Origin: Dimorphilus gyrociliatus
Lineage: Eukaryota > Animalia > Annelida
NCBI GenBank assembly: GCA_904063045.1
Contig: CAJFCJ010000005.1
Coordinates: 3,218,165-3,282,164, forward strand
Direction: 5' to 3'
Length of the DNA stretch: 64,000 nt
A program made the translations under genes and the position numbers. The notes beneath the pieces were generated by a model. It did no database searches. It worked only from the letters and a program-made list of their open reading frames with translations, and was not told the DNA's origin. Of the stretch, positions 12,672-64,000 are shown piece by piece. The stretch's first letter is position 1; every line of letters starts with the position of its first letter.

Positions 12672-15600
12672 TTATTTGTGTTTCTTTTTTGATACTGAAA
12701 ACCAAACAATAGAAAGTTGTTTACAACAATTTTTAATAAGAAATTAATATTTTAATTAGGGATTGTTTACCATTGTTTAATTCTTTTTTCACTTCATTAA
12801 CATCCTTTTCAAGGCCAGTAAGAAATATTTCATTACCAAGACACATTTTATCAACAGTATCACTTTTATTTAAGACGTCTTTATATTGTTGCTGATTGTA
12901 GTCATAAGAAATAAATAATAGATTGGGTTAATATCTCTTTAATTCTTATTCTATTTAATTATTTTTACTTTTTTATTCTGAATACAAGTAGTATTTAAAG
13001 TAATGACAGTAGTTTGCACTTTTTTACAAAGCTTGGTACATTCTTTATTTAATGTCTCTAAATCTTTTCCAATAAATTTCGCTTCATAATAATTATCTAT
13101 TTGTCATATTTATACGTAATTAGCATAAGTAGCATATACTAATCTTAATTTTAAATACTTACAACACTTGTGTAAAGCAGTATCCCTAAAGGCATCCCTA
13201 TCACACTGTTTTCTTGTAAAGAGTTCAATTCTTTTAATGCAAGATAGTTTATTCTTGAAATACATTTCTATAATATTAAATAAATCTGTATGATTTGGTT
13301 GATCGTTCCAAATATTATCTGCAAAAAAACGTAATATATATAAAAAAGAGAAATTAATACAACATTGAATTGGATATTAACCAGCAAAAGAGGGAAAAGT
13401 GATAGAACGTAAGTTATTTTCCTCGGCTGTAGATAAAGCTCTAAATAATTGTTCCTTAATTCCGGATGCCGGTTTTGAGAATATTATTGTTCTTTTGTCG
13501 ATTTTAGTGCAAATTACTTCTTTCTTTTTCAATTCGTTATGATTAAGAAGTATCCTGAAGTGGTTACATATATATTCTGTTATTGGAAGCTTTGGTGAAT
13601 TTGATTCAGGAATTGGACAAATTAAAGCATCCGTTGTGAAGCTTGTTAATTTCAGCTGCTCCACAAATATCTAATTATTCAAAGTGAAAACAGGAAATGG
13701 TTAGAAAGAATATTTTGCAATAGAAAGTAATTACTTGAACTTTGTTGTATAAGAGAAAATGGTCAGTTTTCTCCACCCATGGAAGGATACTTAATTGTTT
13801 TTCTACTTTCTTCGAAAGATAAATAAAAGTATATTAATAAAATATAAAATAGGAGCAAATATATCCTCTCACTTACATTTAGAATGTGTTCGCTTTGTAT
13901 AACAATTGTAACTTTCTCTAAACCATTTTCTCTACCATATTTATCACTTATATGTTTAATAGTATCAATCACATATTCATCTGGATAGTTTAGATATCCT
14001 GCACCAAGGAGAGGAAGAGATAGACTTTTTACTTTCAGTGATTTTGCTTCAGTAAAGCATATTTTTAGTATTTCATCTAATTTCTGAAATATTAATGAGG
14101 GAGAATTTGCGAATACTGTATCGATCAAAAAATGCATTTACCGTATAATTTCTATCTGATGATGATTTTTCTAAATATAAATGAAAGACATATCGACAAT
14201 GGAGTTTAAATCCTTTTGTAACAGTTATGTTTTCCCGAAAATTCCTGATTTTACATTCTTTTTCTAAATCTTCTCCAGCAGCATCACTTAAAGCTTTAGC
14301 AATTCCCTTGTTAAAGTTAAGCGATCTTGAATTGCTATATGCTATTACATCTGCTTTTTCTGACGTAAGATCTCCATATTTAACTTTTAAAATAGAGGGA
14401 GGAAAATCAATATATTCAAATGTATCATAACTTTCTGAATTTTGCAATAAATCATTAACACGTTTATGTAGTATAGGTTTAAAATTTTCAGTAGATTTTT
14501 GGCTGTGTGTGATAATTTGGATCGTTTGCAGGTCCTCAAAATCTAGAGCGAGTTTGTCAATGAAAAGTACTTTGAAAATCAAAGAAACTAAATCCTGGAT
14601 ATGCTGTTGCTTATTAGAGATTTCTTTAGATATTAGAGGTATTTGAATAATTTGTTGCCCGTCTTTATCAATCTTTTTCAAAATTTTTGTCATCTGTGAT
14701 ATTTTTTCAGAATCCCATTTATCTATATAATATGCAGTTGCACCAGATTTTAAAGTAATTTTTTCGCAAGTTTCTGTGATGATATTCCGAATCTCTCGGT
14801 CTTCACCTTCAAAGCAACGTTTTATACAAATATCAGGAAAAATTATCACATCTTTTAGTGCATCTTGTGAAAATTTGTGAGAAATTTGAATTGTCAAGGT
14901 ATCTTTATTATTCTTTATAATTTGTCGATTATGTAATTCACCAATCCCTATATTAACTCCATCCTTTAGTTCAAAAAGTTGACGATTATATGGTGTAAAA
15001 GAAGATTTTAGTAATTTTTTCAAATACTTTGCATGAGATTCGGAAATAATTTTCGAAATTGTAATATCTTTTTTTTCCCTTAATAGTTTTAACTGACAAA
15101 TAAAATCATCAACATCTTTGATCGGACCTTCTATTTCAAGTTTATAAAAATTCTTTTGTTTGGTTTTGGTAAATTCAATATGGTATTTTTTCTCTAATTT
15201 TGAAATATTCTCCTTATTCTTGTCAAAAAATTTAATTTCTAAGTCAAACGATTCGTACTTGAATGATTTTGTTATATTGTCAAATATAGTTTCAATTTCA
15301 GTCGCTATTTCTTTTGATTCTGCAGTTATAAATAAATTCTTCTTGTCGAAGGAGAGAGAATAACTGTTCTTATTGTCTATTTTTTCTTTTAGTTGCTGTT
15401 CAAAAGAAGACCTAGGAAATGAACTAATCGACTTCTTACGAGTGGTGCAATCTCTTAGAAAATAGGTAAGGCTCTTGACAATTCCCTTCCGATTCTCTTG
15501 TACAATTATAATCCCTAATTCAGTTGTGCATTTAGGCTTAGAATCGAAGACAATGATATGATCTTTTCTAAGTATCTTCAAAATATCCTTCTTGTTTAAT

Positions 15601-18568
15601 AAAAATTCTTTATTGCTAGGACTTTCTACATCAAAGTCCATCTCTTTCAAAATATCATGTTCTTGTAATTTGTTTTTTAAAACTTCTTTAATAGTCCTAA
15701 TATCGGTTACTGGACCTTTAAATACAACACAGCAATTCGAATCATGTTGAATTAGAATTCCATCAAGTTCAAATCCATATTTGGTTATAATCTTATAGTC
15801 AGAAGTGGAAAACTTGAAAAGATATTTATCGAGTTTTTTGAAAAATTTGTTCAACTCTGTTTCAACGTCTTCCTTCCATGAATACTGAAGATCACATACC
15901 TTCTCATTATAGTTATACCTTATTTCAATACTGTCATCTACTCTATTAATACTAAACTTTGCTTTGAACTTTCGCAAACAGTCAAAAAGTTTTCTTCTAT
16001 ATTCAACAGAAAAAATAATGAAAGATGTAAACTCTGTCTCATAAAGAAAGCAGTCTACAATTCCGCTTCTTGGTTGGTGAAAAGGGAAATTATGTGGAAT
16101 TTTTCCAAAAGTTTCAATGTATGGAAGAAATTCCAAGACTTTTGATTTATATTTCATTTCATTATTAATAAATAGCTTCAAATCTATTATTATACGTTTC
16201 TTATTGAATACATTTAATAATTTTAATTATAATTTACTAACCTCTTACTCTTTCTTCCTTCAATAAAATTTCAATTTCATCCTCAATTAGCCTTGAGTCA
16301 CATTTGCATATATTATTTTTTTCAAGTGTCACTTTCAAATCTTTAAGTGTTATATTTGAATTGTGGAGACAAAATTTAATTTTACCATCGTCGACTCTAT
16401 CAACAACCAACATTTTACTTTTGAAAGAATGAATTCCAAATCTCAGTTCTAGATTTTCTACATCTGTTTTAAAAACAGGATGAGTCTTAATAATATAAAA
16501 GTGTTCAGTATTTACCTATTGGTTCGTAGAAATATATAAGCGCCTTATATTTATTGGATTCTTTTGGAGAAAAGAATGCTTTGCAATCTGAATTTGTGTA
16601 CTCTCTTAACTTGTTTTTTAATTCATCTATTGTCTCTAGTTTTGGTAGATTACACAGAATAATAAAACTATCAGAGAAACTTAAAGGTTTAGAAGGATTC
16701 GTTAATTGTTTTTGAATATGATAATCTACTTTTTTGCTACCAAGAAATTGTTTTTCTTTCCTTAAAAATTCTTCCAAATCTATAAGAAAATCGTAAGTCA
16801 TATGCAAGTTCAATGAAGTTTAAAATTTACTTGAGTAATTTTTAAAGTTGTAATAAACTTCTGAATCAGTTTCGAAATCAATTTCAAATGTTGAAGAATA
16901 CTCGGCTATTTTTCTTTTTACACCCTCAAACTCGTCATAAAAGCAATCTTTTTCTTGTTTTATCATAAAAGAACATGAGGAATATCCACAACAGTTAGTT
17001 ACCGAGGGAGGTACTTTAATAGGTGCTACTGTTATGTCATTTTTTTCCGCTTTATCAATTTGATAAAGTGCATATTCTTTTAAATCTAATGGAAAGAACT
17101 CTATTTTCATGTAACAAACGATATCGTCCTTCGTTTCAATAAAATACTTTGCATCTTGAGAGTTTGATGAAATTAGAATTTATAACAATTTAAATAAAAT
17201 AATCATTTACCTTCAATCTTTTCAAAAGTGACAAAACTCATTTTAGGTAAAATAATAGTATCTATCACTTTAGCTTGCGATCGTAATATATCCATAACAT
17301 CGTGTAGACGATTTATTACTTTATCTGCCGCAATTATTTTGATTGTTCTTTTAAGAAAACCGCCAGTAACATTAATAGACGCAGGAGAATATATATTGTA
17401 GTCTTTTAGCGCAGTTTCTTTATTCCGACATATGATATGTGTAGCGTCTAAAATGATAATTATGATTAAAAGCATCTAAAAAAATTGAACGTTACGTTGG
17501 TCGTACATTTATCTCTGTAATAATTAATTAAGGCTGAATATTTTTTACAATAGATGTTTTCGATTGCTTGTTTCAAAGTTTCATCCAGCTCATTCCGAGC
17601 TATTTCAAATTTGATCCTCAGATCAAAATCATCTAAATCTGATTCTTTATTCTTTTTTTCAACATAAACGTAATGATTTCCCTCTTCAAGTACATATAAC
17701 ATCCGTTTTTTAAATAAAATTCCTTTGGAGCAAGCCTTCAAAACTTTCCTTGTAACTGAAAATTAAGTTATTATATTTTGAAATTATTGAAATGAAAATT
17801 ACGTTATTATACCATCAAATGATTTATATCGAATGTATACAACTTCAGACTTTCTAACTATTTCATCGAAATCCTCTCCATTTGTTTCTTCAGATGAAAA
17901 TAACTCTTTCAATTCATCAAGTTCTATTTTTTGAGCATTTAAAACAGCTACTCTAGGTATTTCATTCTCAGTGCAGGCTGTTTCTTCATAACCACGTTTG
18001 TGAGTTGTCTTTGCTGGTATATTTTCGTCTTCGCTTTGTTGGTCTAGACAAACAGCTTCGGTGACCGAAGCTTCCTCTCGAATATTGATGTCATTTTTCA
18101 TAGAATTATCTATGATGGGCGTTTCTTTGTCGTGTTCATTTTTACAATTTACTTCTAGACTCACTTGGGAAGTAAATGTACGTTCGTCCTTTAAAATATT
18201 GTCCTGATTATCTGTATACGGAAATATGTTTCGTAATACTAAAAATTTATGACGAATCACAGTTCTAGTTTCGGTTTTAAATGTAAATTACGTTGCAAGA
18301 TATTCATAAATACTGTATATGCTTCATTAAATAGTACATTTGCAGTATACTATTTGTTTTGTTTTGACATCCTTAACTATTTTGTAATAATTCGAAACTA
18401 TTACGATATAAAAGAATAAGCAATAGACTGTAGAACACAAATGTTACCCTCGTTATTTATGCTTGATTGTTGATTTCCTTCCGAAGAACATTTATCATTT
18501 TCCTCCATATTTTTCTCTGTGTTTGAATTCTCCGTTGAAGAATCTGAAGATTTCTGTGCATCGGACAT
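12672..18568 (-). CDS. PARP14-like multidomain protein A (RRM-like/KH-like region + two macrodomains) with no WWE or ART domain; multi-exon, 3' exons approximate
   Basis: ATG at 18568 (MSDAQKSS..). RRM-like segment IILCNLPK..KALIYFYEPI. Large exon about 16.2-14.1 kb. Macrodomain VKYGDLTSEKADVIAYSNS..GIAKALSDAAGEDLEKEC..VTKGFKLHCRYVFH | ..SLSLPLLGAGYLNYP. Second diverged macrodomain ALICPI..RSITFPS. Last exons NEIFLTGLEKDVNEVKKELNN|VSKKKHK*. Confidence 0.8.
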
Positions 18569-22382: not shown

Positions 22383-25300
22383 ATGGATCTTCGCTATAAA
22401 AACCATAAGAGAAGCTATGGTAAAATACATGTTATATTTAAATATTAATAAAATTATTAAGTCAAACAATTAAACATATCATTTAGGAAAAACATCGACA
22501 AAAAAGTCATTCAATTTAGATTGTCCTGTTAATTTAAGATCATTTTACATCTTGAAAGGATTACCCTTAATGAAATTAATATATGAAGTACAGAAATTTT
22601 TGAAAGGTGTAAAATCAACGATGAGATATTTTTTCTCATCTTCTATAGAGAATGAACGTGAGGTTCTTGTATATTTTTATCCGCCGATTGGTAAATATCT
22701 TTTTTGTTATGAATTAAACACTTTTATAATCCTCTTTTATTCGTTTTTCTTCGGATAGACCATAAAGATCTTCTCCATTATTTGAATAAAGCTAATTTTG
22801 GAACAATATCTCTTTATTTGGTACAAGAATGCTCATCATTATCTCTTTACGAGCCTAACCTTACTTATGAGGTAATCGCAAAATTAATGCTGCTTTCTCC
22901 AAATTGTATTATAGAAAAGACAAAAGCAAATCATTTTAAGGTTAACTTTCAAGGAGAGGACGTCGCATGTATGAATATAACAAATCTTCGTTGCATTAGA
23001 TCAGTAACTAATTTTTACTTGTATAGTTTTACGGAAGGTATTGTTGGATAGAATATGGTACCAAGGAAAACCTCTGGATTTTGTTCCAATAATCAGACAC
23101 TTTAAGATTAGTCCAGATAAATTTGACTACTCAATTCCAAGAAATAACATAATTGATCGATTTGAATATCCAACAGAATATGTTTCTTTTATCATATTTT
23201 CTCCCTATTTTCGCAAAAAACTGTTTGATACTTTACGACACCAAGACGCCAATTTTCAAATAAAGAGGATTGATCAGGTTCTTGAAATAACTTACCGTTT
23301 TAAAAGATCAAAGCAAATCTTAAATGAAAATTCGTCACGTATTTGGAAAATAAAAGTAGAAGAGGAATTGGCAGATTTTTTCAAAAAACTAGTGCAAATC
23401 AAAGTTGAAGATGGTTTCTTTTATAAAATACCATCAGGCAGAGATTTGCGTATAAATGGTGTATTAGTTGAATATTGTTCAAATCCTCCTCATATTAAAT
23501 TAACAGGATCACGTGAACATATTGTAAAGATTGAAAAAATTATGAAAAATCTAAACACATCGTGTAAAACTCTTGATATTAATACTAGGGATCCAGCTGT
23601 TAAACAGTTCTTGTTACAAAATGGTCTACTTGATGAACTGAGAAAGAAATATGTAATAGTTTTACTCTTAAATGACGATAATTCTAGAACTTATAGAATT
23701 TTTAGCTGTTCAAGTGATGAACATTCTATAAGGAGCTTTATTCAACAACAAGAAAATTTTATTAAAAGTAGAAAAATTGATGTAATCCACCAAAAACATC
23801 TTCTCAAAAAGTTGAAATTTTTCATAAAAAATGATGAAGACTATTGTTTAATATATGATGAACAGTCCACTTTTATTGCTGCTCAATCAAATGAAACTTT
23901 GGACATTATTGAAAGTTATCTATTGAGTCTTACGTTTGATGACAGTTCTTGTAGCCAAAGTCGTAGAGAGACAGCGATGGAAACGGAAACATATACATCA
24001 AATCCATGTAAGTCTAGTGCTAGCGAGAACGTGAAAGACAATAAATTGTCATATTTCGAAAGACAAATAGAAATATCAGAGGAAACGTACATTAATTGGA
24101 GCTACGAATTGACCCAAATTGAAAATAGTAATCCCATAGAGATATTATACAAAAGAGAACCGAAATTTTATACAAATCTTGTTATACGTGGAGAAGCTAA
24201 ATGTGTTGACAAGACGTATAATTTAATAAATATGTTAAAGTGTGAACAAGTTAATGGAATTTCTAACATATGTAATGATGAGGAGCATATATGTTATTTA
24301 TCCAAACTATACAAAAACAATAATGGTAAAATGGAATATAGATACAAACTTCACTCTCTAAATGATATTACTTATATTATCTGCCCACCATTTATTCAAA
24401 ATATTAGAAAACATAATGATCAAATATGTAAAGTCATAGTTTCTCATCATTTCGATAAGCTTTATACGCAAGCAATTGTAATTAATTCTTATACAAAGAT
24501 CGCTTATTTCTCTAAAGAAGTTAGAAGAAAATTTGAAGAAACAAAAAGCAAACAGAAAGTCATTGATGAGTTTTGTCAACTTCAGCAACAAAGAATATTT
24601 TATATTTCAAACCCTTCTTATTTGAAGAAAGAGAATTTTGAAGATTGTCTCGAAAGATCTAATAAATATCAATATAAATCTATTCAATTTTCATTAATAC
24701 AAGAAACCCACTGTTCCAGAGAAAGTGAATTAACACCTGAAAAAGTTGCTGAAACGATTTTAGATGCTATTTTTTCAAAAATTATATCTTTCAACAGCCT
24801 TGAAATAATTCACATAAACACTCGAAACGAAAAACAAACTAATGACATATTACCATTGCTATTGGAAAGAGTTAACACTCTAACTACTAATACTGATAGC
24901 AAATGTCTTGTAAAATGGTCCAACTATCCATCTTCTATTGTTAACATAGAATATGGCTCACTGAGCGACCAACAAGCAGACATAATTGCCTATGGAGCCG
25001 GGGAACAACTAGAAAGTAGCATACTCTCAAAATTATTGTTGGAGAAGGCAGGATATCAATTACAAACAGAATTTGATTCGAAAAAGTATCAGGAAAAAGA
25101 AATTATTGAAACAAAAGGTTATAACCTTAATTGTAAATATGTTTTTCACACACGTTTTAAACTATACGAATATGACCGAGACCTTTCAGTAAGTTGTACA
25201 TTAAATCATATTTTGTTCCTATATTTTGTTTTTTGTAATCATTTGTCAGAATATGGCTGATGTATTAGCTAAATGCTTTCGGAGAGCAGGGTTACTAAAT

Positions 25301-26418
25301 GCAAAGACTTTTTCTCTTCCACTAGTTGGGTCAGGGATTTTAAAGTATCCAGAGGAAAGTGTAATTAGTTTAGTAAAAACTATTGGCAATACTGTAGGCC
25401 GAAGACATGGTCTGAGAAGGATTACTATTGTGGTTATTGATCCTGGTATTTATAGGGTAAGTAGACATTATATATCTATATATTTACGATTAATCACTAA
25501 AGATTTTTTTGCGAAAGGCATTACAAAATCACGTAAAGACAGTCAGTCCTATTTGGGAAAATTGTTATGATAATTTTATCCTTTATGATAGAATAAATTT
25601 ATATGTAAGTTGTATCCAAGTGGAAAGCTTTTCCTTTTATTGAGCTATATATCTCTATCTTTATAGATTTGCGTTAAGAAAATGACAGAATCAACTTTTG
25701 AAAAAACAGCTTACGTGTACTTTTACCAAAATTCGCAGCATAAAGAGTTTGAGAGAATAGAGCAAATCCATCAAATATCTAGAAAGGAAATTTTGGAAAA
25801 AGCGAAAAAATCGGATACTTTCCTTATAAGTGATAAATGTATTTTTTCGAAATTGGGTAAAGAAAAGAAACAAGAAATATCTACAGTTTTAGACTTTGCA
25901 CATAGACATAAAATAGATTCACTTAGCTTTCCTTATTCATCAAGTAATATTTAACTTATAATAATTCTTATAAATGACAATTTGTTATAATTTTTCCAGT
26001 TCAACACTCAAGTTTGGAACGAAATGATAGTATTAAGGATTTTGTTAGTAATATAGAACATTACTTTAAGACGAAATATATTAGTATATCCATCAAAAGA
26101 ATTAATATAATAGCAAATTGCGGCGAGCAAGCCCGTCAATATACACGAGAAATGTTACTTAAATGTTGTGAGTACATTCAAATAACACCATTAAAGTTTA
26201 TTTGTAAAGATTAATTAATAACAAATTTCATTAGATCAAAATATAGAAGTAAGATTATTCGGAAAAGAATTGAATATTCTTAAAGATAAATTTAAAGAAT
26301 TAGCAGAAGAAATTGATAAAGAAGTTTATTACTAAAAACTGCAAATTGTGACACTATTGTAGGATTTACAAAATTCCATAATATAAATATACTATAGTTT
26401 GTTAATAACATAAAATAA
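22383..26418 (+). CDS. PARP14-like multidomain protein B, inverted paralogue of protein A; macrodomains but no ART domain; 3' end probably frameshifted
   Basis: MDLRYKNHKRSY|GKTS..VLVYFYPPIG| shares an intron position with gene A. The large exon aligns with A (EYVSFIIFSPYFRKKLFDTLR versus EFTSFIIFSVEYRRKLFDCLR). Macrodomain IEYGSLSDQQADIIAY..LSKLLLEKAGYQLQ..TKGYNLNCKYVFH | ..TFSLPLVGSGILKYP. Confidence 0.78.
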
Positions 26419-26922
26419 AGTAAAAGAAATCTGCAGTAAATGCTACAAATTACGAATAAACGAAAGGAACATTTATATCTTGGGATTTATGAATGAAATT
26501 ATGGAATTGAAAAACCTTATCGTAGTATATGTTATTCATTCAGACTCTCTTAATAATCTGTTTATGGCTTGTCCCTCTCATTTTTTAGAAATATTTAAAA
26601 CTATCAAACAATTACGTGACTCTTTAATATTGATATTGATTGAACTTGTTTAAACAAATTAAATGAGGTAAAGCGATTTTTGTGCTATTCCTTTTTCGAA
26701 AAATACTTAATAACAAAATAATAAATCGTTTAAAGGGAATTACACTCTGTCGCTATTTTAGGAAAAAAAAACCCTATTTATTCTTTCAGTTTCAGATTAT
26801 ACAGTATACTGTATATAATCTGCCTAGAATAAGGCAGCTTCATTTAACTTCAAAAGTTAACCATTACTGTTCCTATTGAGAAGGCTGATTAAATTCAGCT
26901 GAAAAAGTGTTAAATTTTCAGT

Positions 26923-29805: not shown

Positions 29806-30012
29806 GTTGAAAACGGAAGTATTAACATAACACTTTTGATCAGAAAGTACTTTATCCTTATGATAAAATCATATTTTATATTATAACTAGTTTTATTTGT
29901 GAAGGATTGTCTGAAAAATGAAATATTTAACTCTGTTTTAACCATTGCTGTTGCTTTGTATTCAATATATCTTTTTCTTATTTTATCATCAACCGCCTTA
30001 TGAAATAAAATT

Positions 30013-30417
30013 TTATTTCCCCATTTTAATAGGTGTACAAACTTCTATTAAGAAACCGTTTATATCACGAAGATATCCCACCTTTTGACCCCACGGTTTC
30101 TCAATAACACTCTCTGCCAACGTGGCTCCAGCGTTTAAAGCCTGTTGAAAATCTTCATCAATATTTTCAGTTGTAAATGCCAATTCAATACCAAAAGCCT
30201 TTTGATCAAGTGAGCTATGTTGAAAACTATTACCAGACTTTAAATTTTGATTAGCTAATTCAAAATTAGCGAAAGATATTGTTGTTTCACCAGAAATTAA
30301 TTCACCATAATCATTCTCCCCAGTTACAAATTTCTCCTTAAATCCAAAAGCATTTTTATAAAATTCAATTGTTTTTGGAACGTTTGCAACATAAAGAATA
30401 GTATACGCAAATTTCAT
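30013..30417 (-). CDS. Bacterial-type VOC/glyoxalase-bleomycin resistance family protein, intronless (HGT candidate)
   Basis: 134 aa with YTILYV..TIEFYKNAFG, DYGEL.SG.TTISFA, GIELAFTT and KPWGQKVGYLRDINGFLIEVCTP, which are classic bacterial VOC-fold motifs. Confidence 0.9.
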   Translation of the reverse strand: MKFAYTILYVANVPKTIEFYKNAFGFKEKFVTGENDYGELISGETTISFANFELANQNLKSGNSFQHSSLDQKAFGIELAFTTENIDEDFQQALNAGATLAESVIEKPWGQKVGYLRDINGFLIEVCTPIKMGK

Positions 30418-48261: not shown

Positions 48262-49559
48262 TTAATTGTAATCGTAACTGAATAAATACTCCGGATAACA
48301 TTGGAGACCGTTGTACACGACATACTCCGATCCATTCCCAATTATACTATCAAAGGTCTTTTTATGATCCACATTTTCGCATGAAGTGTTCTTGCAGGTC
48401 TTGCAAGGAGGCGTTGTAAAAGATTTTCCTGCGTGTGACGTGGAATCATAAGCAACTCCTAGAAGAACTCTCGATAGAAACATATACCGAGGATTTTCTG
48501 AACCGGTGTAGTGATGGGAGAATTTTGGACTATGGGCGTGATAAATACCTTTTCCAAACCAACCAGAACTTGCGACTCGATTATCAAATCCTTTATTTGT
48601 AATTATAAGAGCTTTATTACGAGATGTACCATGAAATAAATACTTTTCATTAATTTCCAGCCTTAAATATTGTCGAAGAGTACTAGGAACCATCAAATCG
48701 ACGGCAGTTTCCCGAAGTTTTATTTTCTCTTTTGTCGAACGTTTTAGCAGGTTTTTACGTTCTGTTGTATAATTTGAAAAGATTTGCGGATTTTCTATCC
48801 TAGTTATCTCTCTAACTGTTATATTTGCATCTGATTCCTTACTTAGATCTTTCCAAGCTTTTAAGAAGAATTTTTCCATTTCACTATATTCAAAAAGAAG
48901 ATTATTGAAAAAATGATAAGAGTTTTTCAATTTTTCATACTTGAATAGATATCCTTCTTTGTTTTTCAAGAAGACAACTTTAGGTTTAGTCTCAAATATA
49001 TCATTCAAAGGACCATAAAAACAAGACCAGTTTTCAGGAGTTTCGTCACACATATCGATTTTCTCCTTTATGAAAAGGAGAAGAAACAGTTAGAGTTATC
49101 ACTCATAACAATAATGATATTATACCTTAATATTCCTGTCATAGTGAGAGTTCATAAGGGAATCTGTTCAAAAGTAAATTATGACAGGAAAAATTTGAAT
49201 AAAAGACTCATTATTGCTGTAAAAATTTAAATCAGTTACTATATCTATTACTTACGAGAAGTTTGTGGTCTGTCAAAAGACAAAGGCAGATTCTGTCTAT
49301 CTGTATCAAATGCTAATTAAAAAAAACTATCATCTTCTATGATAGTAACAGTAAATATAGTATATTATTTATACCTGGCGGATAGCTGTAATAATTTGCC
49401 AAAATTGGATTTTGTTTGTCTATAGAACCACTGAAAATGATTAAGAACATAAAGAATATAGTTTCACTTGTATTCTGGATTATATTACCTTGATCGATTG
49501 GTTCGTCTCGAATTTAGAGGAAATAAAAAGATTTTTGACATATTGAAATTAGAATTCAT
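48262..49559 (-). CDS. Small PARP-family ART with an H-Y-E triad; 5' exons uncertain and possibly extending to about 50.3 kb
   Basis: ITRIENPQIFSNY, NEKYLFHGT, GWFGKGIYHAHSPKFSHHYT, YMFLSRVLLG, FDSIIG, SEYVVY..QCYPEYL. Small phase-compatible exons lie upstream to ATG 49559. Confidence 0.88.
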
Positions 49560-51098: not shown

Positions 51099-52265
51099 AT
51101 GAAATTAAATGAGCACATTGTAAAAGGGATTGAAAAAGATATTTCTCCTTTCTATTATTACGATTTAAAGGTTTTAGAGGAGACTTTAATGACTGTGAAG
51201 AATGAATCTTCAAAATATAATTACAAAGTACATTATGCTGTAAAAGCAAATTTTAATCCCAAAATTATGCGTTTAATTTCCAATTATGGCTTTGGAGCTG
51301 ATTGCGTAAGTGGTAATGAAATAATTCATGCTTTAAAAATGGGATTTTCAAGTAATGACATCGTTTTGGCTGGTGTTGGAAAAACTGATAGAGAAATTCG
51401 TTTGGCATTGGAAAATAATATATTTTGTCTGAATGTTGAATCTTTGGAAGAATTGAAAATAATTAATAATATTGCTCTTGATATGGGAAAATTTGCTCCT
51501 GTAGCTCTTCGATTAAATCCTAATATTAATGCAAAAACACACCATTATATTACAACTGGTTTGTCAGAAAATAAGTTTGGAATACCTTTAACAATGTTAG
51601 ATAACATTTTGGATGAAATACAAACAATGGATAATATTTATTTGAAAGGATTACATTTTCATATTGGTTCTCAGATAACAGACTTAACCGTGTATGAAGA
51701 TCTTTGTAAGCAGGTTAATGAAATACAAATTGACTTGGAAAAGAGAAACATTAACTTGGATCACATAAACGTTGGTGGTGGATTGGGGATTAATTACAAT
51801 AATCCAGATGATAGTGAGGCTTATAATGTTTCTAATTATTTTGCATTATTTGATAAATATTTGGATAAAAGACCAAACCAAAGTTTACACTTTGAAATTG
51901 GTCGTTCGATTGTTGGAACTTGTGGATCGTTAATTACAAAAGTTCTATTCGTAAAAAAAGGTATACAAACAGATTTTGTGGTAGTCGATGCCGGAATGAC
52001 AGAACTCATTCGTCCAGCACTATATCAATCATATCATCAAATAAATAATCTAAGTTCACTTGATGAAAGTTGTAGATACCATGTAGTAGGTCCAATTTGC
52101 GAGAGTTCCGATTGCTTTGGTAAGAATATTATTTTACCAAAGACAAGAAGAGGAGATATAATTGCAATTCGTAGTGCAGGAGCCTACGGACAAGTGATGT
52201 CCTCCAGATATAATCTTAGGAGTACAGCTCCAGCTCTCTATAGTGATGGTACGTGGGAAAATTAA
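51099..52265 (+). CDS. lysA: Diaminopimelate decarboxylase, bacterial type, intronless (HGT candidate)
   Basis: 388 aa with PFYYYD, HYAVKAN (PLP Lys), GADCVSGNE, GVGKT, NVESLEEL, TTGLSENKFG, HFHIGSQI, NVGGGLG, EIGRSIV, DAGMTELIRPALY, VVGPICESSD and AGAYG..MSSRYN. Confidence 0.95.
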   Translation: MKLNEHIVKGIEKDISPFYYYDLKVLEETLMTVKNESSKYNYKVHYAVKANFNPKIMRLISNYGFGADCVSGNEIIHALKMGFSSNDIVLAGVGKTDREIRLALENNIFCLNVESLEELKIINNIALDMGKFAPVALRLNPNINAKTHHYITTGLSENKFGIPLTMLDNILDEIQTMDNIYLKGLHFHIGSQITDLTVYEDLCKQVNEIQIDLEKRNINLDHINVGGGLGINYNNPDDSEAYNVSNYFALFDKYLDKRPNQSLHFEIGRSIVGTCGSLITKVLFVKKGIQTDFVVVDAGMTELIRPALYQSYHQINNLSSLDESCRYHVVGPICESSDCFGKNIILPKTRRGDIIAIRSAGAYGQVMSSRYNLRSTAPALYSDGTWEN

Positions 52266-52905
52266 AATAACGAATATTTTTTATTTCTAGTTTGTATTGT
52301 TTGGTTTTGTTTTATAAATTGTAAACTCAATTCTTTGCAGTATTATATTAATATTTAATGCAAAATATACTGAATAATCTACTGCATATATTTAAAATTT
52401 GTCACAACAAAACTCTTATTAATTTAATAGTAATTAGTTGTTAATAAAATGAAACTATGCCAGGATATACCGTATGAAAGTAACACACGTAGATTACGTA
52501 CGGTTATTACAGAGATATCATTGACCCAAGGAATTGAACGATTAAGATAAGATAGAAATATTACTCATATATTAGTATCAATAGTCTAATATTGAATCAG
52601 ATCTCATAAATATCAATATCAAATCAGAGTAGCCGAGAATATAAAACAACATCTGTTTTAGATTTTTACAGTTTTACAAGAAATATTCTATATTTACTTT
52701 TGGTAAAAGTAATATTGCAGTTTTACAGTTATAATTCTTGCAAAAGGGGCCTTAAAATTATACACAGTACAAAAACAATAGGCTCTTATGTTTTCTTGGC
52801 TTGTTATTGGTTCAGATTAATGCATTATAAAAAATTCTATTTATTTATTTAAATATAGTCTATAAATGGGCAAAATTGCAATCACAAGCACTTTCACTCT
52901 ACAAC

Positions 52906-53655
52906 ATGAATAAGTTGAAAACGAAAATATCCATAATAATTTTGATGATAATTATTCATTCGTCTAATACCTCAAATACTTGTTCATTAAGGAAAGTTGG
53001 TTTTGATGACAAACAACTATTTCCAGACTCAATTTTCACGGATAAAGATCATTTTTTAACTCCAGCAAGGGCAGCAAGAATGAAACCAACTGCAGGTGTT
53101 TGGTTAGCTTCTAGAGTACCTGGAAGTTGGATTCAAGCAGACCTATGTTAGAAGTAAAATTTCATACAATATAATATTACTTTAAAATGTTGTACAAATT
53201 GTAGTGCGTATCTATGATATATATGGAATAGATATGAAAGGTGGTGATGCAACTAGGTATACTACCAATTTTCATCTCATGTATGGACTCTCCACATCTT
53301 CATTAGTATATTTTAAAGAAGGAAGCAGTAAGAAGGTCTCGTCTATACTATAAATAATTTTTATGTATAATTGTAATTTGAATTTTGGCATTGTTGTAGG
53401 TTTTTAAGGGAAATATTGCATCTAACTGGAACCAATTAATTCATGTGACATTCCCGCAAAAAATTGTAACAAGATATATTAGAATACTTACAAGATCTGG
53501 TAGCCTCTATGCTGGAATTGCTTTCGAACCCTACGGATGCCGTAAGTTATCTTTAATAGATAATACTTACAATTTTTATCATATAAACATATTTTCATTT
53601 TAATTATATTAAAAAAGACAAGACAAACGCATTTCAACTATCTAACTATTTTTAA
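52906..53655 (+). CDS. Secreted single F5/8 type C (discoidin) domain protein; last exon tentative
   Basis: Signal-like KISIIILMIIIHSS; ARAARM..GVW..SWIQADL|..IYGIDMKG..YTTNFHLMYG..|VFKGN..TRYIRI..FEPYGC. Confidence 0.8.
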
Positions 53656-58187: not shown

Positions 58188-59325
58188 GTCTACCTGTCTC
58201 TAATTGAAATAGAATATGTCGCTTTGAATGTTTTGTTTTTTGTTATTTTGTCCGTAATAGTAACTCTATTAATCGGATTTGCATAAACTAAACTATTTAT
58301 AAACCTTTAGATATAACCATCTACAATACTTATATATAGAAAAAAAGAATAGAATGGTAAATGTATACTTTTTATCCAAAAAAACTAAAAAAATCAAAAC
58401 AGGTGTCGAGAGTTATTCATTGCAACTTTTTCTTCATATTTTCGCCTACATAAAGCATTCCTATCTTTTTACTCACCACAATTATACTCAATACAAATAT
58501 TCAAATTAGATTTCTACTAGATTAAACATGAATTTCATTATATTATTATAGTTATATAATTCAAAGATATCCCGCAAAGAAATTAAGTAAAGTATTCAAT
58601 TTCAATGAATTTTCTAATTTATTTATTAAAAATTTGAATATTTCAGATTATTAATAAACTTTTTATATAATAACTTTTTAATAAAGTGAATTGAATATAT
58701 TTTCATTTAATATCTACTTTTTAAAGAATTCTATATAAATGATAGAAAAGTGGGAAAGTATTAGAGAGATGATATATGAAAAAAGAAAAGTCTCTATGAT
58801 CAAAAGAGAATCAATCAATCAATTAATAATTACCTGTCAAAGATTCTACTATCGATAATTTCCTAACAGACTATTGCTTAATACTGTACTTTAACATTTC
58901 TATAATATTTTTTTATTTATAATTTACTTTTAAATGTTTTTCAATAAGATATTTTTTATCTTATTTGATCAGAGACTTTTTTATTAAAGAAAACAAAAAC
59001 AACTACTTTTTTTCCACAGTTAAACTTTGTTATGTTGTTCTAGTTTTATCTATAATTCTACGAGTAGACTGTAACAACTTTATGATTCATTCTTAGAATG
59101 TAAACAAAAGCTTTGAAAAAGATGTAGCAAATCCGTCTATTTGTAATTTTAGAAGGCTTTTAAATAATATACTTGCTTGGCCACGTTTTTCGTAACAAAT
59201 ATCTATAAATATATTGTAGACAGTATTGTTTAACACTTCTTTCTCGTCCAAAGATTATTTTCGTATGTAAAATTTTCTAATGGATACAATTTAGTAAGAT
59301 TCAATGAACTATGAATATTTAGGCA

Positions 59326-62300
59326 ATGGCTCGAAAATTATTCACTAAAGAAGGTTTGTATTATTCTTTTACTAATCGTTTTATTACTACTTATCAATTA
59401 AGGCTTATATCTTTACTTAGAGAGAGATGTACCTTATCTTCTAGTTCAGAATATAAACGATACAATGAAAGATGAACATTTAAAATCTTTGTTATGTCGT
59501 AACGAACAAGTTTGCGGAGGCAATTTAAGTTTCTACCAAAGAGACAATACTACTTTAACGATTAAATACGATTCGGTCGAAAGTAATAAAGAGAATATTT
59601 TCCTTTAATTTTATAGTATTACTATTTATTAATCATCTTTTTTCCTTTCTTGATTGCGTCAAAAAGCTACCTTGAATGTATTGATAAAGTGCTCGAATGG
59701 TTTGAATTTTCAAGGTCAAATTCTTATTATTCATGAAAAAACAAATAAAATGATATTAGTACAGCGGGAATATGATGAATTTGATGAAGATGAATTGATA
59801 ATGATTTTCGGCATACCAATAGATGAGGGTGGTGGTACAAACTTTGGTATAAAAGATCTCTATAGAATAGATAAGAAACATTTAATTATTCAATATATCC
59901 ATGAAAACTGTTAGTATTTTTCCCCGTAGTATTTTGCTAAATGAATGTATAAAAACTCTTTTTAGTTGCGAGTAAACATTTGAAAAAGAGAATGGAAACT
60001 GATGATGAAACTGGAGAAAAATTTCTAATTTATCCACCATCTTTTATTGGAATATGTGATATTCTATGCGAAAGAACAATACAATTATCATATGCAAATT
60101 TGTTTAGTGAGAAAAAATTAGCTAAAACTTTAAAGTTGATTAAATCAGATATAAACCTTATCGAATATAATTATTGGCCCAGAAGAGACATTGGTTTTAT
60201 TAGTCTTAAAAGCTTTGCTGGTTAGGATAAATAAATATCTTATTAAATTATCATTAATTAACAATCAATCGTTTATCGTATTTTAGATGTTAAGTTTCTC
60301 CTTGAAAGAAAAGAAATAAAACTTCGTAATTCAACATTAACGTTTGAAAAATTCAACTTTCTCGATTTCATAAGCTATAAACTTGACGACTTTAAAGACA
60401 AACTTCCTGTTACTTCTGATAAACAATTTGAAAAGAAAAGATTATCCAACATTGATCCTATATATTATACTTATAAATCGGAATTTCATCAATTCGTTAT
60501 CAATTCGACAACTTTTCAAAGCTATTTATCCGAAGAGTTGAAAAGATTCAACTGTAAATTAGCTTTTGATCGAGATAAACCGACGATTGTTGTTTCTTTA
60601 GCTGATGGTAACGATAATGAAAAGATAACTAATGAATTGAATATTCATTTTAAACAATTAACAATTAAATATAGAAAAATTGATAAACTTATCTTTAACA
60701 ATTTAAAATCGGACAAAGTAACAATTAACTACTGCAAAGATACTTCAAAGGCTCAAATAATTGGAAAGTTGGATGACGTTGCACTAATTGTAAAACAAAT
60801 AGAGGATAACATAAAAGAGAACTTTAATAATATTGAATTATTTATCGATGTTAAAGATGAACTCTGTAAAAGATATCTTATCGATAATCTCTTCCTAAAG
60901 CAAATTCAAACTAAATATCCGCAAGTCCAGCTAATCGAAACGAAAAAACCATCAGTAGTTGGTATTTCAGCACCGTCTGCTTGTCATAAACGTATAGAAT
61001 TCGAAATTTTACATCGTTTAGCAAATATTCACTTTACGACAATAAATACTCCTACAGATATACTTAATTTGTGGTCAAATGAATTTATAATTAAAGATGA
61101 ACTTACTAAGAAGTTAGTTCTAGTTGAAAATGCAAAAAATTTCAAGCTATCCGTAACGAAACGTTCATTCATAAACATCATCGCAAATTCGGAGGAAACT
61201 CTAAAAGACATAGAGAATTTGATCAATTCAATTGCCTTTTCTTTTTCAATACCTATTCCAAAGAATATTGGTGAAAGATCAGTAAATTGGTTGGATTTTA
61301 AAAAGGACATTGTCAGATCATTTCAGCCATTGAAACTTACTGAAAATGAATCAGATGTTAATATTATAGCATTTCGAAGTAGCTGTCAAGAAATTTTAGA
61401 TTATATTATTGAAAATTTCAAAATTTTAAACTTGGACTTTGACGAATTTAAAATCCGGCGGTGTATAAAAGGAGATGAATATGAGGATAGTGAGGAGGAT
61501 CTATACGATGTTCACGATGATTCGTTAATCTATTCGTTTATAAATGATAATTTTACTGATCAAGATTCTGAATCAGACAGCGAAAGGGAAGATGAAGAAA
61601 TCGAAAGCAAAGATGAAAATTCTTCTATAAAAACGTTAACGAAAACTTTTTACTGGAAAGAGCATACCTATCCATTAAATAGTAAAAATATGGAAGTGGT
61701 CAATTTGAAGAAGGATATCGAACGACAACATAAAGTTCTAATTGAGAACTTTAACGTAAGAACAATACTTTTAAAGTGTTCAAATGAAAAAACTTGCACA
61801 GTCAGAATAACGAAGAATTGTATTAGTCGGTCATATTCAACAATAATTCTTATCTTTACCAGTTTTGATGATAATTTAAAAAAGAAACTTACCGAATATC
61901 TTGATAAAAATATTAATAATTACTTTAAAGACTTTTCAAAATGTAACAATTTCTATCAAATTCAAGATCAAAATCAGAAGAAACTATACTTTCTATTAAA
62001 CTATTCCAATTCTTCAACAACTTTACTATCCGAACAACTTAAATTATGCTTTAACAGAGTGAATTATGATAGAATAACAATATTACCAAATTTCCATTCA
62101 ACACCATATACATTTTATAAATTTGACGAAATCAACTTATGCATGTTTGAAACAATAGCTGAAATGACTTTAAAGTTATTACCGGAAGAAATTGATATTC
62201 AAATTAAGAGTGTAGCTGAAGAGAATATAACTTTAGCCGTTATGTCTTCGTCACTTTATGGTCTTGTTTATCAACAGGATAAGTTTAAAAAATTAAATCA

Positions 62301-64000
62301 TTGCGTTCCCAAAAAATCTTCTATATTCAACATAATTAAGGGATCAATTACAAAGCAGAAAGCGGATGTTATTGCTAATATATCTAACAAACAAAATTTG
62401 ATTTCAACGCCTATTTCTAAGAAGTTAATAAAGAGGACAAAAGAATTAAAAAACCGTCTGATAAATCATCAAAATGGTTGTTATAATTTTCATAAAAAGC
62501 ATGAAGTACTATTAACAAAAGGATTTGGTTTAAACTGCAAGTTTATATTCCATTCCGCTTTGAAACAGTACTCGGGTAAAGGGGATGAAAAGGTAAGATC
62601 TCTACGAGAATCTTTCAATTTTGATGTAAGAAAGAAACTCTATCTATTTCCTTTTTGAACAGAATTTAATAGATCTGCTTGTTTTATGCTTTGATAAAAT
62701 GAGATATAAGAATTCAAAGAGTATTTGTTTCCCGTCATTTTTCGAAGATGATTTAAACTATCCACCGGAAGTGGTTGCAAGATGTATAGAAGAAATAGGT
62801 TCAAGTTATGGTAAGGAAATGGGTCTTGAAAATATAACGCTTGTAATCTCAAATATTGATATTTTTGAGGTACGTAGTTCTGAAATAAGAAACTAATTGA
62901 TCATTTAATACTAACTATTAGTTATTTAATTAGAAATTTGAGGATTACTTTTACGGTAAACCTTGGAAATATGAATCTGGAAAGTTTAAACTTTATGGAA
63001 ATATACAAATTAATTTGTCTACTAAAACTCTATCAGACACAAAAGCTCAAGCTATAATATGTCCAATTGAATCCTCTCTAGCTCTGGGTGATAATCCCAT
63101 AACCAAAGATCTTGTAGAAAAATATAGTCATTTACAAGATAAAATCAATAAAATAGCCTGTAATGGTGACGTATTTTCCTATAGATTTAATGAAATGAAT
63201 AATACATTATTAATCTTTTGTAAAATTACAAATGGAGGCATAAAAAATCAAATTTTTAAAACTTTATCATATGTTGATGAATTAAATATCAGTTCAATCG
63301 CAATTCCAACAATCAAAGGTTATAATATATTTAAATACGTTTGCTGGACAAACTTTTTAACTTGATTTTTAATTTTTCTTCTCTTTTCTTTATATAGAAA
63401 ACTTTCAAATTAGTTTGTCAGAGTATGAAATATTTTTAATGATTATTGAATCGTACTTTTATGGAATAAAACCTAAAAATCTTCGAAATATTACAATATT
63501 TATGAAAGAAAATGAAAGAAACATTTATAAAGATACTCTTTTAAAAAAGTGTAGTACGTGTTATTATGTAATAATTTAATTGCTTAAATATTAATGTAGT
63601 TCTATTATAGATAATCTAAATTACGTAAATATTTCTGGTTTTAAACAATCGAATATAGTAAAAGCATTTCATGATTTTACATCTGGATTAGAATCTCTTG
63701 TTACTGCATCATCGATGAATTTACCTTACAAATACGATTCCCTTAACGTTAGTTGAATATTGAATGAATAAATTTGCATATTTAATTAATATTTTAATTT
63801 TATTTCAATTAGCCAATCATTAAATCTACTTGCGTATTTTTTCCTGACATAATAACTCAAGTTTATGGAAACGAATTATTCTTTTTTGGCTTTGAAAAGA
63901 GTGTTAAAAACTTAAAAAAGTCTCTTGACTGTATTATTAAACATCACGAACAGAAGAGAATACAAAAAGAACATAGGAATTTATTGCAAGATTGCGTAAC
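59326..64000 (+). CDS. PARP14-like multidomain protein C (RRM-like repeats, KH-like region, two macrodomains); partial, runs off the right edge
   Basis: MARKLFTKE|ERDVPYLLVQNIND..; RRM-like DEDELIMIF..EGGG; macrodomain IIKGSITKQKADVIAN..LTKGFGLNCKFIFH; second macrodomain QAIICPI..SSIAIPTI; last visible exon GNELFFFGFEKSVKNLKKSLDCIIKHHEQKRIQKEHRNLLQDCV. Confidence 0.8.

What the first reader, a model, noticed from the sequence alone, without database searches (positions are those of the whole stretch)
12672..64000. A modular ADP-ribosylation/ubiquitin defence-like cluster: PARP14 parts spread over separate genes, interleaved with E3-receptor-like LRRs, lectins and bacterial genes
Seen: within about 51 kb there are two ART-less reader-type genes, one ART-ART-macro gene, one macro-only gene, one minimal H-Y-E PARP, one longer PARP14-like gene, five LRR-helical paralogues, two secreted lectin folds and two bacterial-type enzymes. 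Knowledge: mammalian PARP9/14/15 cluster with the E3 ligase DTX3L in interferon defence, and ZYG-11/ZER1 are CUL2 substrate receptors. Inference: an invertebrate innate-immunity locus evolving by birth and death, where writer, reader and decoy modules are encoded separately and coupled to a different E3 family.
Basis: inference. Interest (0 to 1): 0.75.

Follow-up and report, generated by a model that had tools for sequence, protein, structure and literature searches.

The report
Split PARP14-like genes beside ZYG11-like genes
In the tiny genome of the marine worm Dimorphilus gyrociliatus, a 51-kb stretch holds a PARP14-like gene family broken into separate "reader" and "writer" genes, next to five copies of an orphan gene that looks like a ubiquitin-ligase adaptor, but nothing yet shows that the two families work together.

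Summary
The window comes from the annelid Dimorphilus gyrociliatus.

- **PARP14-like genes A and B.** They are collinear PARP14 homologues with a KH-like region and three macro positions. They have no WWE domain and no ADP-ribosyltransferase (ART) domain.
- **Gene E.** It looks the same as A and B, but the window end cuts it.
- **Gene C.** It carries an H-Y-L ART, a His-less Y-Y-E ART and a macro domain.
- **Gene D.** It is macro-only.
- **Stand-alone ART.** A 263-aa ORF is an ART domain with an H-Y-E triad.
- **LRR-helical genes.** Five paralogues are real and form an orphan family by sequence. A low-confidence AlphaFold model nevertheless matches ZYG11B-Elongin BC best in the PDB. Four of the five start with a BC-box/Cul2-box-like motif.
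- **Bacterial-type genes.** Both are Bacteroidota-like: a diaminopimelate decarboxylase (lysA) at 55-58% identity and a VOC/glyoxalase-type gene at 66%.
- **Lectin folds.** One is solid and the other is weak.

No evidence links the PARP14-like and LRR families apart from adjacency. I found no shared promoter word, no RING, Deltex or WWE gene, and no pseudogene relics. Conservation in other species and genome-wide family sizes could not be tested.

Verdict: this is a lineage-specific variant of a macro-PARP cluster beside a candidate cullin-receptor array. The immune role and the functional coupling remain inference.

The parts
12736..18568 (-). Gene A (DgyrCDS3849, P0002, 1623 aa). PARP14 homologue with an N-terminal region, a KH-like region, a degenerate macro1, a canonical macro (residues ~1200-1355) and a divergent macro3 position. 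No WWE or ART.
   Evidence: tblastn maps P0002 exons here. Pfam Macro 57 bits and no PARP. PARP14 macro domains E 5e-16. hhalign against the PARP14 profile 98.2%, E 5.4e-14. Name.
22474..26650 (+). Gene B (DgyrCDS3851, P0003, 1027 aa, model 22887-26332). Same architecture as A and ART-less. An upstream exon (22474-22755) and a downstream exon (26414-26650) resemble gene A exons and may belong to it.
   Evidence: Foldseek top match of its model is the PARP14 macro1-2 pair 3vfq (E 4.6e-11). AATAAA lies about 80 bp after the annotated stop.
26924..29753 (+). Gene C. Own ATG exon encoding a glycine-zipper-like segment, then ART1 (H-Y-L, ~27384-28100), ART2 (Y-Y-E with the His lost, ~28301-29150) and a macro domain (~29150-29753).
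   Evidence: Pfam PARP and Macro on exons. Internal paralogy E 5e-22. Triads read from alignments to PARP14/15-like proteins. In-phase GT/AG splice sites read.
30013..30417 (-). Intronless VOC/glyoxalase-family gene of bacterial type. It is a neighbour and is not shown to belong to the system.
   Evidence: Pfam Glyoxalase_2 E 5e-13. 66% identity to a Sphingobacterium faecium VOC protein. GC 32%, like the host. The exact ORF is in the public protein set.
30821..31728 (+). Gene D. Gly-rich N-terminus with a (VQG)5 9-bp repeat, followed by a single macro domain.
   Evidence: Pfam Macro E 2.9e-4 on the first macro exon. Paralogy to the gene C macro exons E 2.8e-27 and 2.9e-15. Tandem repeat.
32206..34438 (+). 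LRR-helical paralogue 1. N-terminus has BC-box-like TLRQLSLHAV and Cul2-box-like LPVSISEEV.
35626..37775 (-). LRR-helical paralogue 2. Motif present.
38374..40611 (-). LRR-helical paralogue 3. Motif present, with Thr at the Cys position.
41010..43250 (-). LRR-helical paralogue 4. Motif present, with Thr at the Cys position.
43871..44977 (+). ConA-like (Laminin_G_3) protein with a hydrophobic N-terminus and a Cys-rich tail. It sits between LRR4 and LRR5.
   Evidence: Pfam PF13385 E 2.6e-12. Secretion is inferred from the N-terminal sequence only.
45335..47395 (+). LRR-helical paralogue 5 (DgyrCDS3855, P0154, 528 aa). The N-terminal motif is degenerate.
   Evidence: Word search self-hit. Exon map. 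AF2 model pLDDT 59. Foldseek rank 1 and 2 are ZYG11B-EloBC.
48262..49053 (-). Single-exon 263-aa stand-alone ART domain with an H-Y-E triad.
   Evidence: Pfam PARP 67 bits against a cut-off of 26.7. PDB best hits are PARP12, PARP14, PARP15 and tankyrase. Triad read.
51099..52265 (+). Intronless diaminopimelate decarboxylase (lysA) of Bacteroidota type. It is a neighbour and is not shown to belong to the system.
   Evidence: NCBIfam TIGR01048 equivalog 394 bits against a cut-off of 298. 55-58% identity to Paludibacteraceae, Flavobacteriales and Marinilabiliaceae. GC 31%.
52876..53600 (+). Three-exon gene with a hydrophobic N-terminus and a possible F5/8-type-C (discoidin) domain.
   Evidence: Only a weak Pfam hit (E 0.056) plus motif reading. 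A PDB search of exon 1 found nothing.
59323..64000 (+). Gene E. Third member of the A/B type, with a 798-aa open frame, a macro domain and a further macro-like region. The window end cuts it, so its 3' domains are unknown.
   Evidence: It is included in profile A7.

Best explanation
The region is a duplication-prone stretch of the Dimorphilus gyrociliatus genome. It holds two lineage-specific tandem gene families side by side.

Family 1 descends from a PARP14-like ancestor by duplication and domain loss.
- Genes A and B, and E as far as visible, keep the KH-like region and three macro positions. Only the middle macro is canonical.
- They end before any WWE or ART domain, so they can at most bind, or possibly remove, ADP-ribose. 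They cannot write it.
- Gene C carries one plausible mono-ART (H-Y-L), a second ART that lost the NAD-binding His (Y-Y-E, probably inactive) and a macro domain.
- Gene D is a lone macro domain.
- A 263-aa gene is a lone H-Y-E ART.
- Writer and reader functions are therefore encoded in trans. In vertebrate PARP14 they sit on one polypeptide.

Family 2 is five LRR-plus-helical-repeat genes. Their overall shape and N-terminal BC-box/Cul2-box-like motif suggest Elongin BC-Cullin-2 substrate receptors of the ZYG11 type.

Shown here: domain content, paralogy, collinearity with PARP14, the catalytic triads, and the bacterial affinity of two inserted genes.

Inferred: ADP-ribose binding or transfer activity, E3-receptor function, and an immune role.

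The adjacency of the two families is best read for now as co-location in a plastic region. That region also accepted two Bacteroidota-derived genes. A demonstrated functional module is not established.
For: - Organism and gene names.
- Paralogy.
- PARP14-type macro domains.
- Relatives named PARP14/PARP15 in fish, octopus and oyster.
- Collinearity with the PARP14 KH region and macro domains 1-3: with a negative control.
- ART domains lie at only three places in the window.
- Triads.
- Gene C has its own start exon, and gene B has a poly(A) signal.
- LRR family: generic LRR hits only. ZYG11B-EloBC is the top structural match, with several F-box/LRR receptors below it. The N-terminal motif is in 4 of 5 copies, occurs in 0.1-0.2% of shuffles, and is in no other ORF start in the window.
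- Acquired genes have host-like composition.
- The genome paper reports few expanded families, mostly local duplicates linked to immunity: PMC7854359.
Against: - The AF2 model behind the ZYG11B match is weak (mean pLDDT 59; helical half 45-65), and TM-scores are only 0.27-0.35.
- No sequence method links the LRR family to ZYG11/ZER1.
- The BC/Cul2-box consensus comes from memory and was relaxed to allow Thr.
- Pfam KH_PARP14 hits are all below threshold (E 0.05-0.19).
- The AF2 model of gene B is poor outside the macro domains (pLDDT 49.5).
- Gene models for C, D, E and LRR1-4 are my own exon reading without transcript data.
- Genome-wide copy numbers are unknown.
Confidence: 0.6

Rival explanations
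1. The two families form one functional ADP-ribosylation-ubiquitin defence module. ARTs mark targets, ART-less macro proteins read the mark, and the ZYG11-like receptors bring a Cullin-2 ligase. This would be analogous to PARP9-DTX3L but with a different E3 family.
For: - The two arrays are tightly adjacent, with about 480 bp between gene D and LRR1. The genome has only about nine expanded families.
- The 263-aa ART lies on the far side of the LRR array, so the LRR genes are embedded within the PARP/macro genes.
- The LRR genes have a cullin-receptor-like shape and motif.
- Vertebrate macro-PARPs are known to cluster with, and work with, an E3 (established knowledge: PARP9-DTX3L).
Against: - No shared promoter word.
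- No expression or interaction data.
- No RING, Deltex or WWE gene in the window.
- Conservation of the linkage could not be tested.
- Unrelated genes are interspersed: an UNC-93-like transporter, lysA, VOC and lectin-fold genes.
Confidence: 0.2
2. The LRR-helical genes are not ubiquitin-ligase receptors. They are a fast-evolving orphan LRR family, for example binding or scaffold proteins. Under this reading the ZYG11B match reflects only a shared LRR-then-helices layout in a poor model.
For: - Pfam LRR_Zer-1 and the F-box families were not hit.
- The best PDB sequence hits are ANP32 and internalin LRRs.
- Profile searches of the N-termini and of a helical exon do not find ZYG11B or ZER1.
- The model has pLDDT 59 and TM-score at most 0.35.
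Against: - ZYG11B ranks first by four orders of magnitude over the next non-ZYG11B chain.
- The N-terminal motif sits at residue 5 in four paralogues that are only 34-39% identical there.
Confidence: 0.15
3. The apparent fission is an artefact of assembly or gene calling. Under this reading B+C, or E plus sequence beyond the window, are ordinary full-length PARP14-like genes, and the bacterial genes are contamination.
For: - Gene models are uncertain.
- The public annotation leaves only three CDS numbers (3852-3854) between DgyrCDS3851 and DgyrCDS3855, where I count eight genes.
- Gene E is truncated by the window.
Against: - Gene A ends with a stop, and no ART-like sequence lies downstream of it.
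- Gene B has a stop followed by AATAAA. Gene C has its own ATG exon with in-phase splice sites.
- The bacterial-type genes have host-like GC and GC3. They sit within a few hundred bases of intron-containing animal genes on a 4.5-Mb contig.
Confidence: 0.05

Closest known systems
Vertebrate macro-PARP locus (PARP14, PARP15, PARP9 with DTX3L)
   Same: Both are tandem clusters of macro-domain PARP genes. The macro domains are closest to PARP14, PARP9 and PARP15. The KH-like region and three macro positions are collinear with PARP14. One ART has the H-Y-L triad typical of PARP14/15 (triad identity from established knowledge), and one ART is degenerate, as in PARP9 and PARP13.
   Different: The ART is not on the same polypeptide as the KH-macro part. 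No WWE was found. Gene C has the order ART-ART-macro. A lone H-Y-E ART exists. No Deltex-type E3 gene was found in the window. Pfam RRM and KH families of PARP14 do not reach threshold.
ZYG11B / ZER1, Cullin-2 substrate receptors for Gly/N-degrons
   Same: Both have N-terminal LRRs followed by a helical-repeat region. ZYG11B-EloB-EloC is the best PDB structural match (9lk2_A E 3.6e-8; 9bid_A 4.8e-5). A BC-box-like and Cul2-box-like motif sits at the N-terminus of four copies (consensus from memory).
   Different: There is no detectable sequence similarity. The proteins are shorter, about 530-620 aa against about 730-770 aa. The model is low-confidence. A degron pocket cannot be assessed. LRR5 lacks the motif.
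Lineage-specific zyg-11-like expansions in Caenorhabditis (for example zeel-1)
   Same: This is a precedent, from my own knowledge, for a ZYG11-like family that expands and diverges rapidly in one lineage and sits in a variable region.
   Different: zeel-1 is recognisably homologous to zyg-11 and carries a transmembrane part. No such homology is shown here.
Bacterial lysA acquired by animals (herbivorous arthropods, whiteflies)
   Same: Both are intronless, bacterial-type diaminopimelate decarboxylases embedded in an animal genome. Precedents are listed in PMC4943190 and PMC4607527 (titles and abstracts only).
   Different: Here the recipient is a bacterivorous marine annelid and the nearest relatives are Bacteroidota. 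A second Bacteroidota-like gene lies 21 kb away. No link to the PARP genes is shown.

Membership tests
PARP (ARTD) catalytic domain | Pfam PF00644 above the gathering score | tested here: met
   The 263-aa ORF scores 67.2 bits against a cut-off of 26.7, covering model positions 3-198 of 199. Gene C ART exons are each below the cut-off (24.9 and 15.8 bits) because the domain is split by introns. They align to PARP14/15-like C-termini at E 1e-17 to 1e-18.
PARP (ARTD) catalytic domain | H-Y-[E/I/L] NAD-binding triad | tested here: met
   The 263-aa ART is H-Y-E and gene C ART1 is H-Y-L. Gene C ART2 is Y-Y-E, with the His lost, so this feature is not met for that copy.
Macro domain | Pfam PF01661 above the gathering score and a macro fold | tested here: met
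   P0002 57 bits, P0003 35 bits, gene C exons 31 and 25 bits, against a cut-off of 22. Foldseek TM-score to PARP9/PARP14 macro domains is 0.73-0.76.
PARP14 orthologue (full architecture) | KH-domain region followed by three macro domains, collinear | tested here: met
   hhalign of A7 against a 13-sequence PARP14 profile gives 92%, E 6.4e-7, 577 columns onto columns 354-1039. P0002 gives 98.2%, E 5.4e-14 onto macro1-end through macro3. The control gives 0.08%. Pfam KH_PARP14 families reach only E 0.05-0.19.
PARP14 orthologue (full architecture) | WWE domain and ART on the same polypeptide | tested here: not met
   P0002 and P0003 have no PARP or WWE hit. ART-like sequence occurs only at 27.5-29.1 kb and 48.4-48.9 kb. 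Gene E cannot be judged because the window cuts it.
ZYG11/ZER1 family | Sequence membership (Pfam LRR_Zer-1 PF25013, or a significant match to ZYG11B/ZER1 chains) | tested here: not met
   PF25013 is in the library (it hits P0001 and P0155). It is absent for all five LRR exons and for P0154 even at E<=10. No ZYG11B or ZER1 chain appears in five PDB sequence searches.
ZYG11/ZER1 family | LRR domain followed by ARM-like helical repeats | tested here: inconclusive
   The AF2 model shows LRR at residues 40-235 and helices at 280-528, but mean pLDDT is 59. Foldseek rank 1 and 2 are ZYG11B-EloBC, with TM-scores 0.27-0.35.
ZYG11/ZER1 family | VHL box (BC box plus Cul2 box) that binds Elongin BC-CUL2 | tested here: inconclusive
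   A motif fitting the remembered consensus starts at residue 5 of LRR1-4. It arises in 0.1-0.2% of shuffles and is absent from LRR5. Binding is not testable with these tools.
Diaminopimelate decarboxylase (LysA) | NCBIfam equivalog TIGR01048 above its cut-off | tested here: met
   394 bits against 297.9. Both Pfam Orn/DAP/Arg decarboxylase domains are hit. AVKAN, HIGSQ, GGGLG and CESSD motifs are visible in the ORF (motif identities from my own knowledge).
F5/8 type C (discoidin) domain | Pfam PF00754 above the gathering score | tested here: not met
   Only 14 bits (E 0.056) on one of three exons. The joined protein was not searched.

The most novel reading that the evidence does not exclude
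An animal has split the PARP14 system into trans-acting parts: ART-less KH-macro readers, a membrane-tethered ART/pseudo-ART/macro protein, and a bare H-Y-E ART. It has also recruited a private, rapidly diversifying family of Cullin-2-type substrate receptors encoded in the same locus. ADP-ribose marks would then be read and converted into ubiquitylation by a ZYG11-like E3 rather than a Deltex-type E3.
Probability: 0.12. Interest if true: 0.8.

Novelty: new variant of a known kind. Interest (0 to 1): 0.45.

Why it matters
Macro-PARPs (PARP9, PARP14, PARP15) are fast-evolving antiviral factors in vertebrates, and their mode of action is still debated. This annelid offers a natural dissection of PARP14. 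The KH-macro part and the ART parts are separate genes, one ART is visibly degenerate, and a bare H-Y-E ART is present. That would allow reader and writer functions to be tested separately in a small, tractable genome.

If the neighbouring LRR-helical genes are Cullin-2 receptors, the locus would be a second, independent example of ADP-ribosylation genes linked to an E3. The first example is PARP9-DTX3L.

Even without coupling, two further points are useful. Several genes here seem to be missing from or merged in the public annotation. Two Bacteroidota-derived genes are apparently integrated in a genome described as conservative.

Tried and rejected
- **Word searches.** The 702-aa gene A exon found nothing and the LRR profile found one weak hit. 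The length window excludes the true full-length proteins.
- **Metagenome scan** with the LRR profile found no relatives.
I therefore could not fetch the contigs of P0010 and P0020, the only outside relatives of the KH-like region, or test synteny.
- **Mixed alignment** of P0154 with 20 exon fragments (A2) was misaligned and discarded. A3 was used instead.
- **AF2 of gene B** was too poor outside the macro domains to call KH folds. Only the repeated strand-strand-helix pattern is suggestive.
- **Pfam scans** of helical exons, N-terminal exons and the 709-aa ORF at permissive E-values gave nothing usable.
- **Promoter word enrichment** across 11 upstream regions was not significant. The best p was 4e-4 with about 3000 tests.
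- **RNA scans** (Rfam, tRNA) found nothing.
- **Rotifer origin.** I first guessed a bdelloid rotifer because of the bacterial genes. One search ruled this out.
- **Joined spliced proteins.** Proteins for genes C, D, E, LRR1-4 and the discoidin-like gene were not built or searched. Only exons by reference and database models (P0002, P0003, P0154) were used.


Full report
**Origin and nature of the window**

The window has 28.8% GC. Its ORFs are split by GT...AG introns of about 60 bp, and it carries a PRDM-type PR/SET exon, so it is from an animal. A word search with the fifth LRR ORF returned its own gene model, DgyrCDS3855 of Dimorphilus gyrociliatus, on a 4.55-Mb contig. Genes A and B are DgyrCDS3849 and DgyrCDS3851. 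The source is therefore the miniature annelid with the 73.8-Mb genome (PMC7854359). It is not human. [quoted passage not shown] Neither the paper nor its supplements name PARP14-like or LRR families.

**The macro/PARP genes**

A self-comparison of all open frames shows the paralogy directly.
- The 702-aa and 739-aa exons of genes A and B are 28% identical over 760 residues (E 3e-53).
- Macro-domain exons of A, B, C, D and E all match each other.
- The two ART exons of gene C match each other (E 5e-22).

A full HMMER search of 1.84 billion representatives with the gene A exon returned several groups.
- The database models of gene A (P0002, 1623 aa) and gene B (P0003, 1027 aa).
- Two unnamed proteins from run assemblies (P0010, P0020) that share the N-terminal region.
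- About 155 proteins that match only the macro part. The ones looked up are annotated PARP14, PARP14-like or PARP15 in fishes, octopus and oyster.

P0002 and P0003 contain Pfam Macro and no PARP domain. The best solved relatives of the macro domain are PARP14 macro domains (E 5e-16 for gene A) and a PARP9 macro domain. The Foldseek top hit of the gene B model is the tandem macro1-2 structure of PARP14.

The part upstream of the macro domain was open after the Pfam scans. Only sub-threshold KH_PARP14_2, _3 and _6 hits appeared. A profile-profile comparison settled it.
- The non-macro N-terminal 600 residues of A, B and E (A7) align collinearly with columns 354-1039 of a 13-sequence PARP14 profile. 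That stretch is the KH region and macro1. Probability is 92%, E 6.4e-7, over 577 columns.
- P0002 aligns with the end of macro1, macro2 and macro3 at 98.2%, E 5.4e-14.
- An unrelated control, the LRR profile, gives 0.08%.

So A and B are true PARP14 homologues with a degenerate macro1, a canonical macro2 and a divergent macro3. They stop before any WWE or ART. ART-like sequence occurs at only three places in the window.

**The ART domains**

I read the catalytic triads from alignments to PARP14/15-like C-termini.

| ART | Coordinates | Triad | Note |
|---|---|---|---|
| Gene C ART1 | ~27.4-28.1 kb | H-Y-L | |
| Gene C ART2 | ~28.3-29.2 kb | Y-Y-E | HGT replaced by YET, so the NAD-contacting His is lost |
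| 263-aa single-exon ORF | 48262-49053 | H-Y-E | Complete PARP domain (67 bits); nearest solved relatives PARP12, PARP14, PARP15, then tankyrases |

Gene C appears to be separate from gene B.
- Gene B's stop is followed about 80 bp later by AATAAA.
- Gene C has its own ATG at 26924 in a glycine-zipper-like exon.
- Two in-phase GT/AG introns lead from that exon into ART1 (my reading).

Gene D is a Gly-rich N-terminus plus one macro domain. Gene E resembles A and B, but the window end cuts it.

**The LRR-helical genes**

Five paralogues are real. By sequence they are orphans.
- Pfam gives only weak generic LRR hits.
- The LRR_Zer-1 family is in the library but is not hit, even at E<=10.
- PDB sequence and profile searches list ANP32, internalins, LGR5 and FBXL17, and never ZYG11B or ZER1.
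- Word and metagenome searches find no outside relatives.

An AlphaFold2 model of DgyrCDS3855, built with the four other LRR exons as its alignment, is of low to medium confidence. Mean pLDDT is 59, the LRR part scores 65-85 and the helical half 45-65. Even so, its best PDB matches are the two ZYG11B-Elongin B/C structures (E 3.6e-8 and 4.8e-5, full-length alignments, TM-scores 0.27-0.35). The next matches are CARMIL, NLRC4 and several F-box/LRR receptors at E of 4e-4 or weaker.

Four of the five proteins begin at residue 5 with a motif that fits the BC-box consensus, followed about 20 residues later by a Cul2-box-like phi-P-x-x-phi-x-x-x-phi. I recalled both consensus patterns from memory and relaxed the BC-box to allow Thr. 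The combined pattern arises in 0.1-0.2% of shuffles, and no other ORF start in the window has it. LRR5 has a degenerate version.

My reading is that these genes plausibly work like cullin-RING substrate receptors. Membership of the ZYG11/ZER1 family is not shown.

**Other genes**

- The lysA-like ORF passes the NCBIfam equivalog cut-off. It is 55-58% identical to Bacteroidota enzymes over its full length.
- The VOC ORF is 66% identical to a Sphingobacterium protein.
- Both are intronless, have host-like GC and GC3, and sit within a few hundred bases of intron-containing animal genes. They look like integrated acquisitions, not contamination.
- The ConA-like lectin fold is solid. The discoidin-like one is weak.
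- An UNC-93-like transporter gene lies between A and B.
- A 709-aa Cys-rich and Asp/Asn-rich orphan ORF lies at 54.4-56.5 kb.

**Is it a module?**

Nothing beyond adjacency links the two families.
- No RING, Deltex or WWE gene was found.
- No promoter word is shared.
- No pseudogene relics were detected.

The region also accepted two foreign genes, which fits a plastic, insertion-tolerant neighbourhood. In a genome with so few expanded families, however, two arrays abutting each other is not trivially expected. The coupled-module reading therefore stays open at about 0.2, or about 0.12 in its full form.

**Limits**

- Gene models for C, D, E, LRR1-4 and the discoidin-like gene are exon-level readings.
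- Secretion and membrane anchoring are inferred from N-terminal sequence only.
- The public annotation leaves only three CDS numbers (3852-3854) between DgyrCDS3851 and DgyrCDS3855, where I count eight genes. The exact lysA and 263-aa PARP ORFs are not in the protein collection. Family sizes cannot therefore be read from protein databases.

**Verdict**

The ZYG11 part is supported only at fold and motif level. The immune, coupled-module claim is untested. This is a new variant of a known kind of locus, of moderate interest.

Noticed in passing
window 51099-52265 (+) and 30013-30417 (-): Two intronless genes whose closest relatives are Bacteroidota: lysA at 55-58% identity and a VOC/glyoxalase gene at 66% to Sphingobacterium. 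Their GC3 is host-like at about 20%. They lie 21 kb apart among animal genes and are likely horizontal acquisitions. I found no mention of them in the genome paper text I searched.
   Followed up: partly
window 26333-45334: The public annotation numbers gene B as DgyrCDS3851 and LRR5 as DgyrCDS3855, which leaves three CDS numbers for what I read as eight genes (C, VOC, D, LRR1-4, ConA-like lectin). The exact lysA and 263-aa PARP ORFs are also absent from the protein collection. Several genes here may be unannotated or merged.
   Followed up: partly
window 54360-56489 (-): A 709-aa ORF with a Cys-rich N-terminus and a long Asp/Asn-rich tract encoded by a 9-bp repeat (27 copies, 55158-55402). 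GC is 36%, higher than its neighbours. It has no family match in Pfam or NCBIfam and may be a remnant of a mobile element.
   Followed up: partly
window 26924-27236 and 30821-31108 (+): Genes C and D both seem to start with glycine-rich, hydrophobic exons. Gene C has a glycine-zipper-like GxxxG run. Gene D has a (VQG)5 repeat from a 9-bp tandem repeat at 30911-30957. This hints at membrane association of an ART/macro protein.
   Followed up: partly
window 45335-45480 (+): LRR5 keeps the position of the N-terminal BC/Cul2-box-like motif seen in LRR1-4 but not its residues. The Pro and the key Leu/Ser are lost, so it may be a non-ligase or decoy copy.
   Followed up: partly
P0010 (709 aa) and P0020 (502 aa), run assemblies, not in the window: These are the only proteins among 1.84 billion representatives, besides genes A and B, that share the KH-like N-terminal region (26-28% identity).
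   Followed up: no
window 1287-1727 (-): A PRDM-type PR/SET domain exon (Pfam PRDM2_PR, E 1.3e-20), followed by about 10 kb with few open frames and GA/CT microsatellites near 10.4 kb. This marks the left edge of the gene-dense cluster.
   Followed up: no
window 19230-21180 (+): An UNC-93-like/MFS transporter gene sits between genes A and B. It is divergent from gene A across about 660 bp.
   Followed up: no
window 30418-30820 and 43251-43870: Two short divergent intergenic regions pair a cluster gene with an unrelated neighbour: VOC with gene D (403 bp) and LRR4 with the ConA-like lectin gene (620 bp). These may be shared promoters.
   Followed up: no
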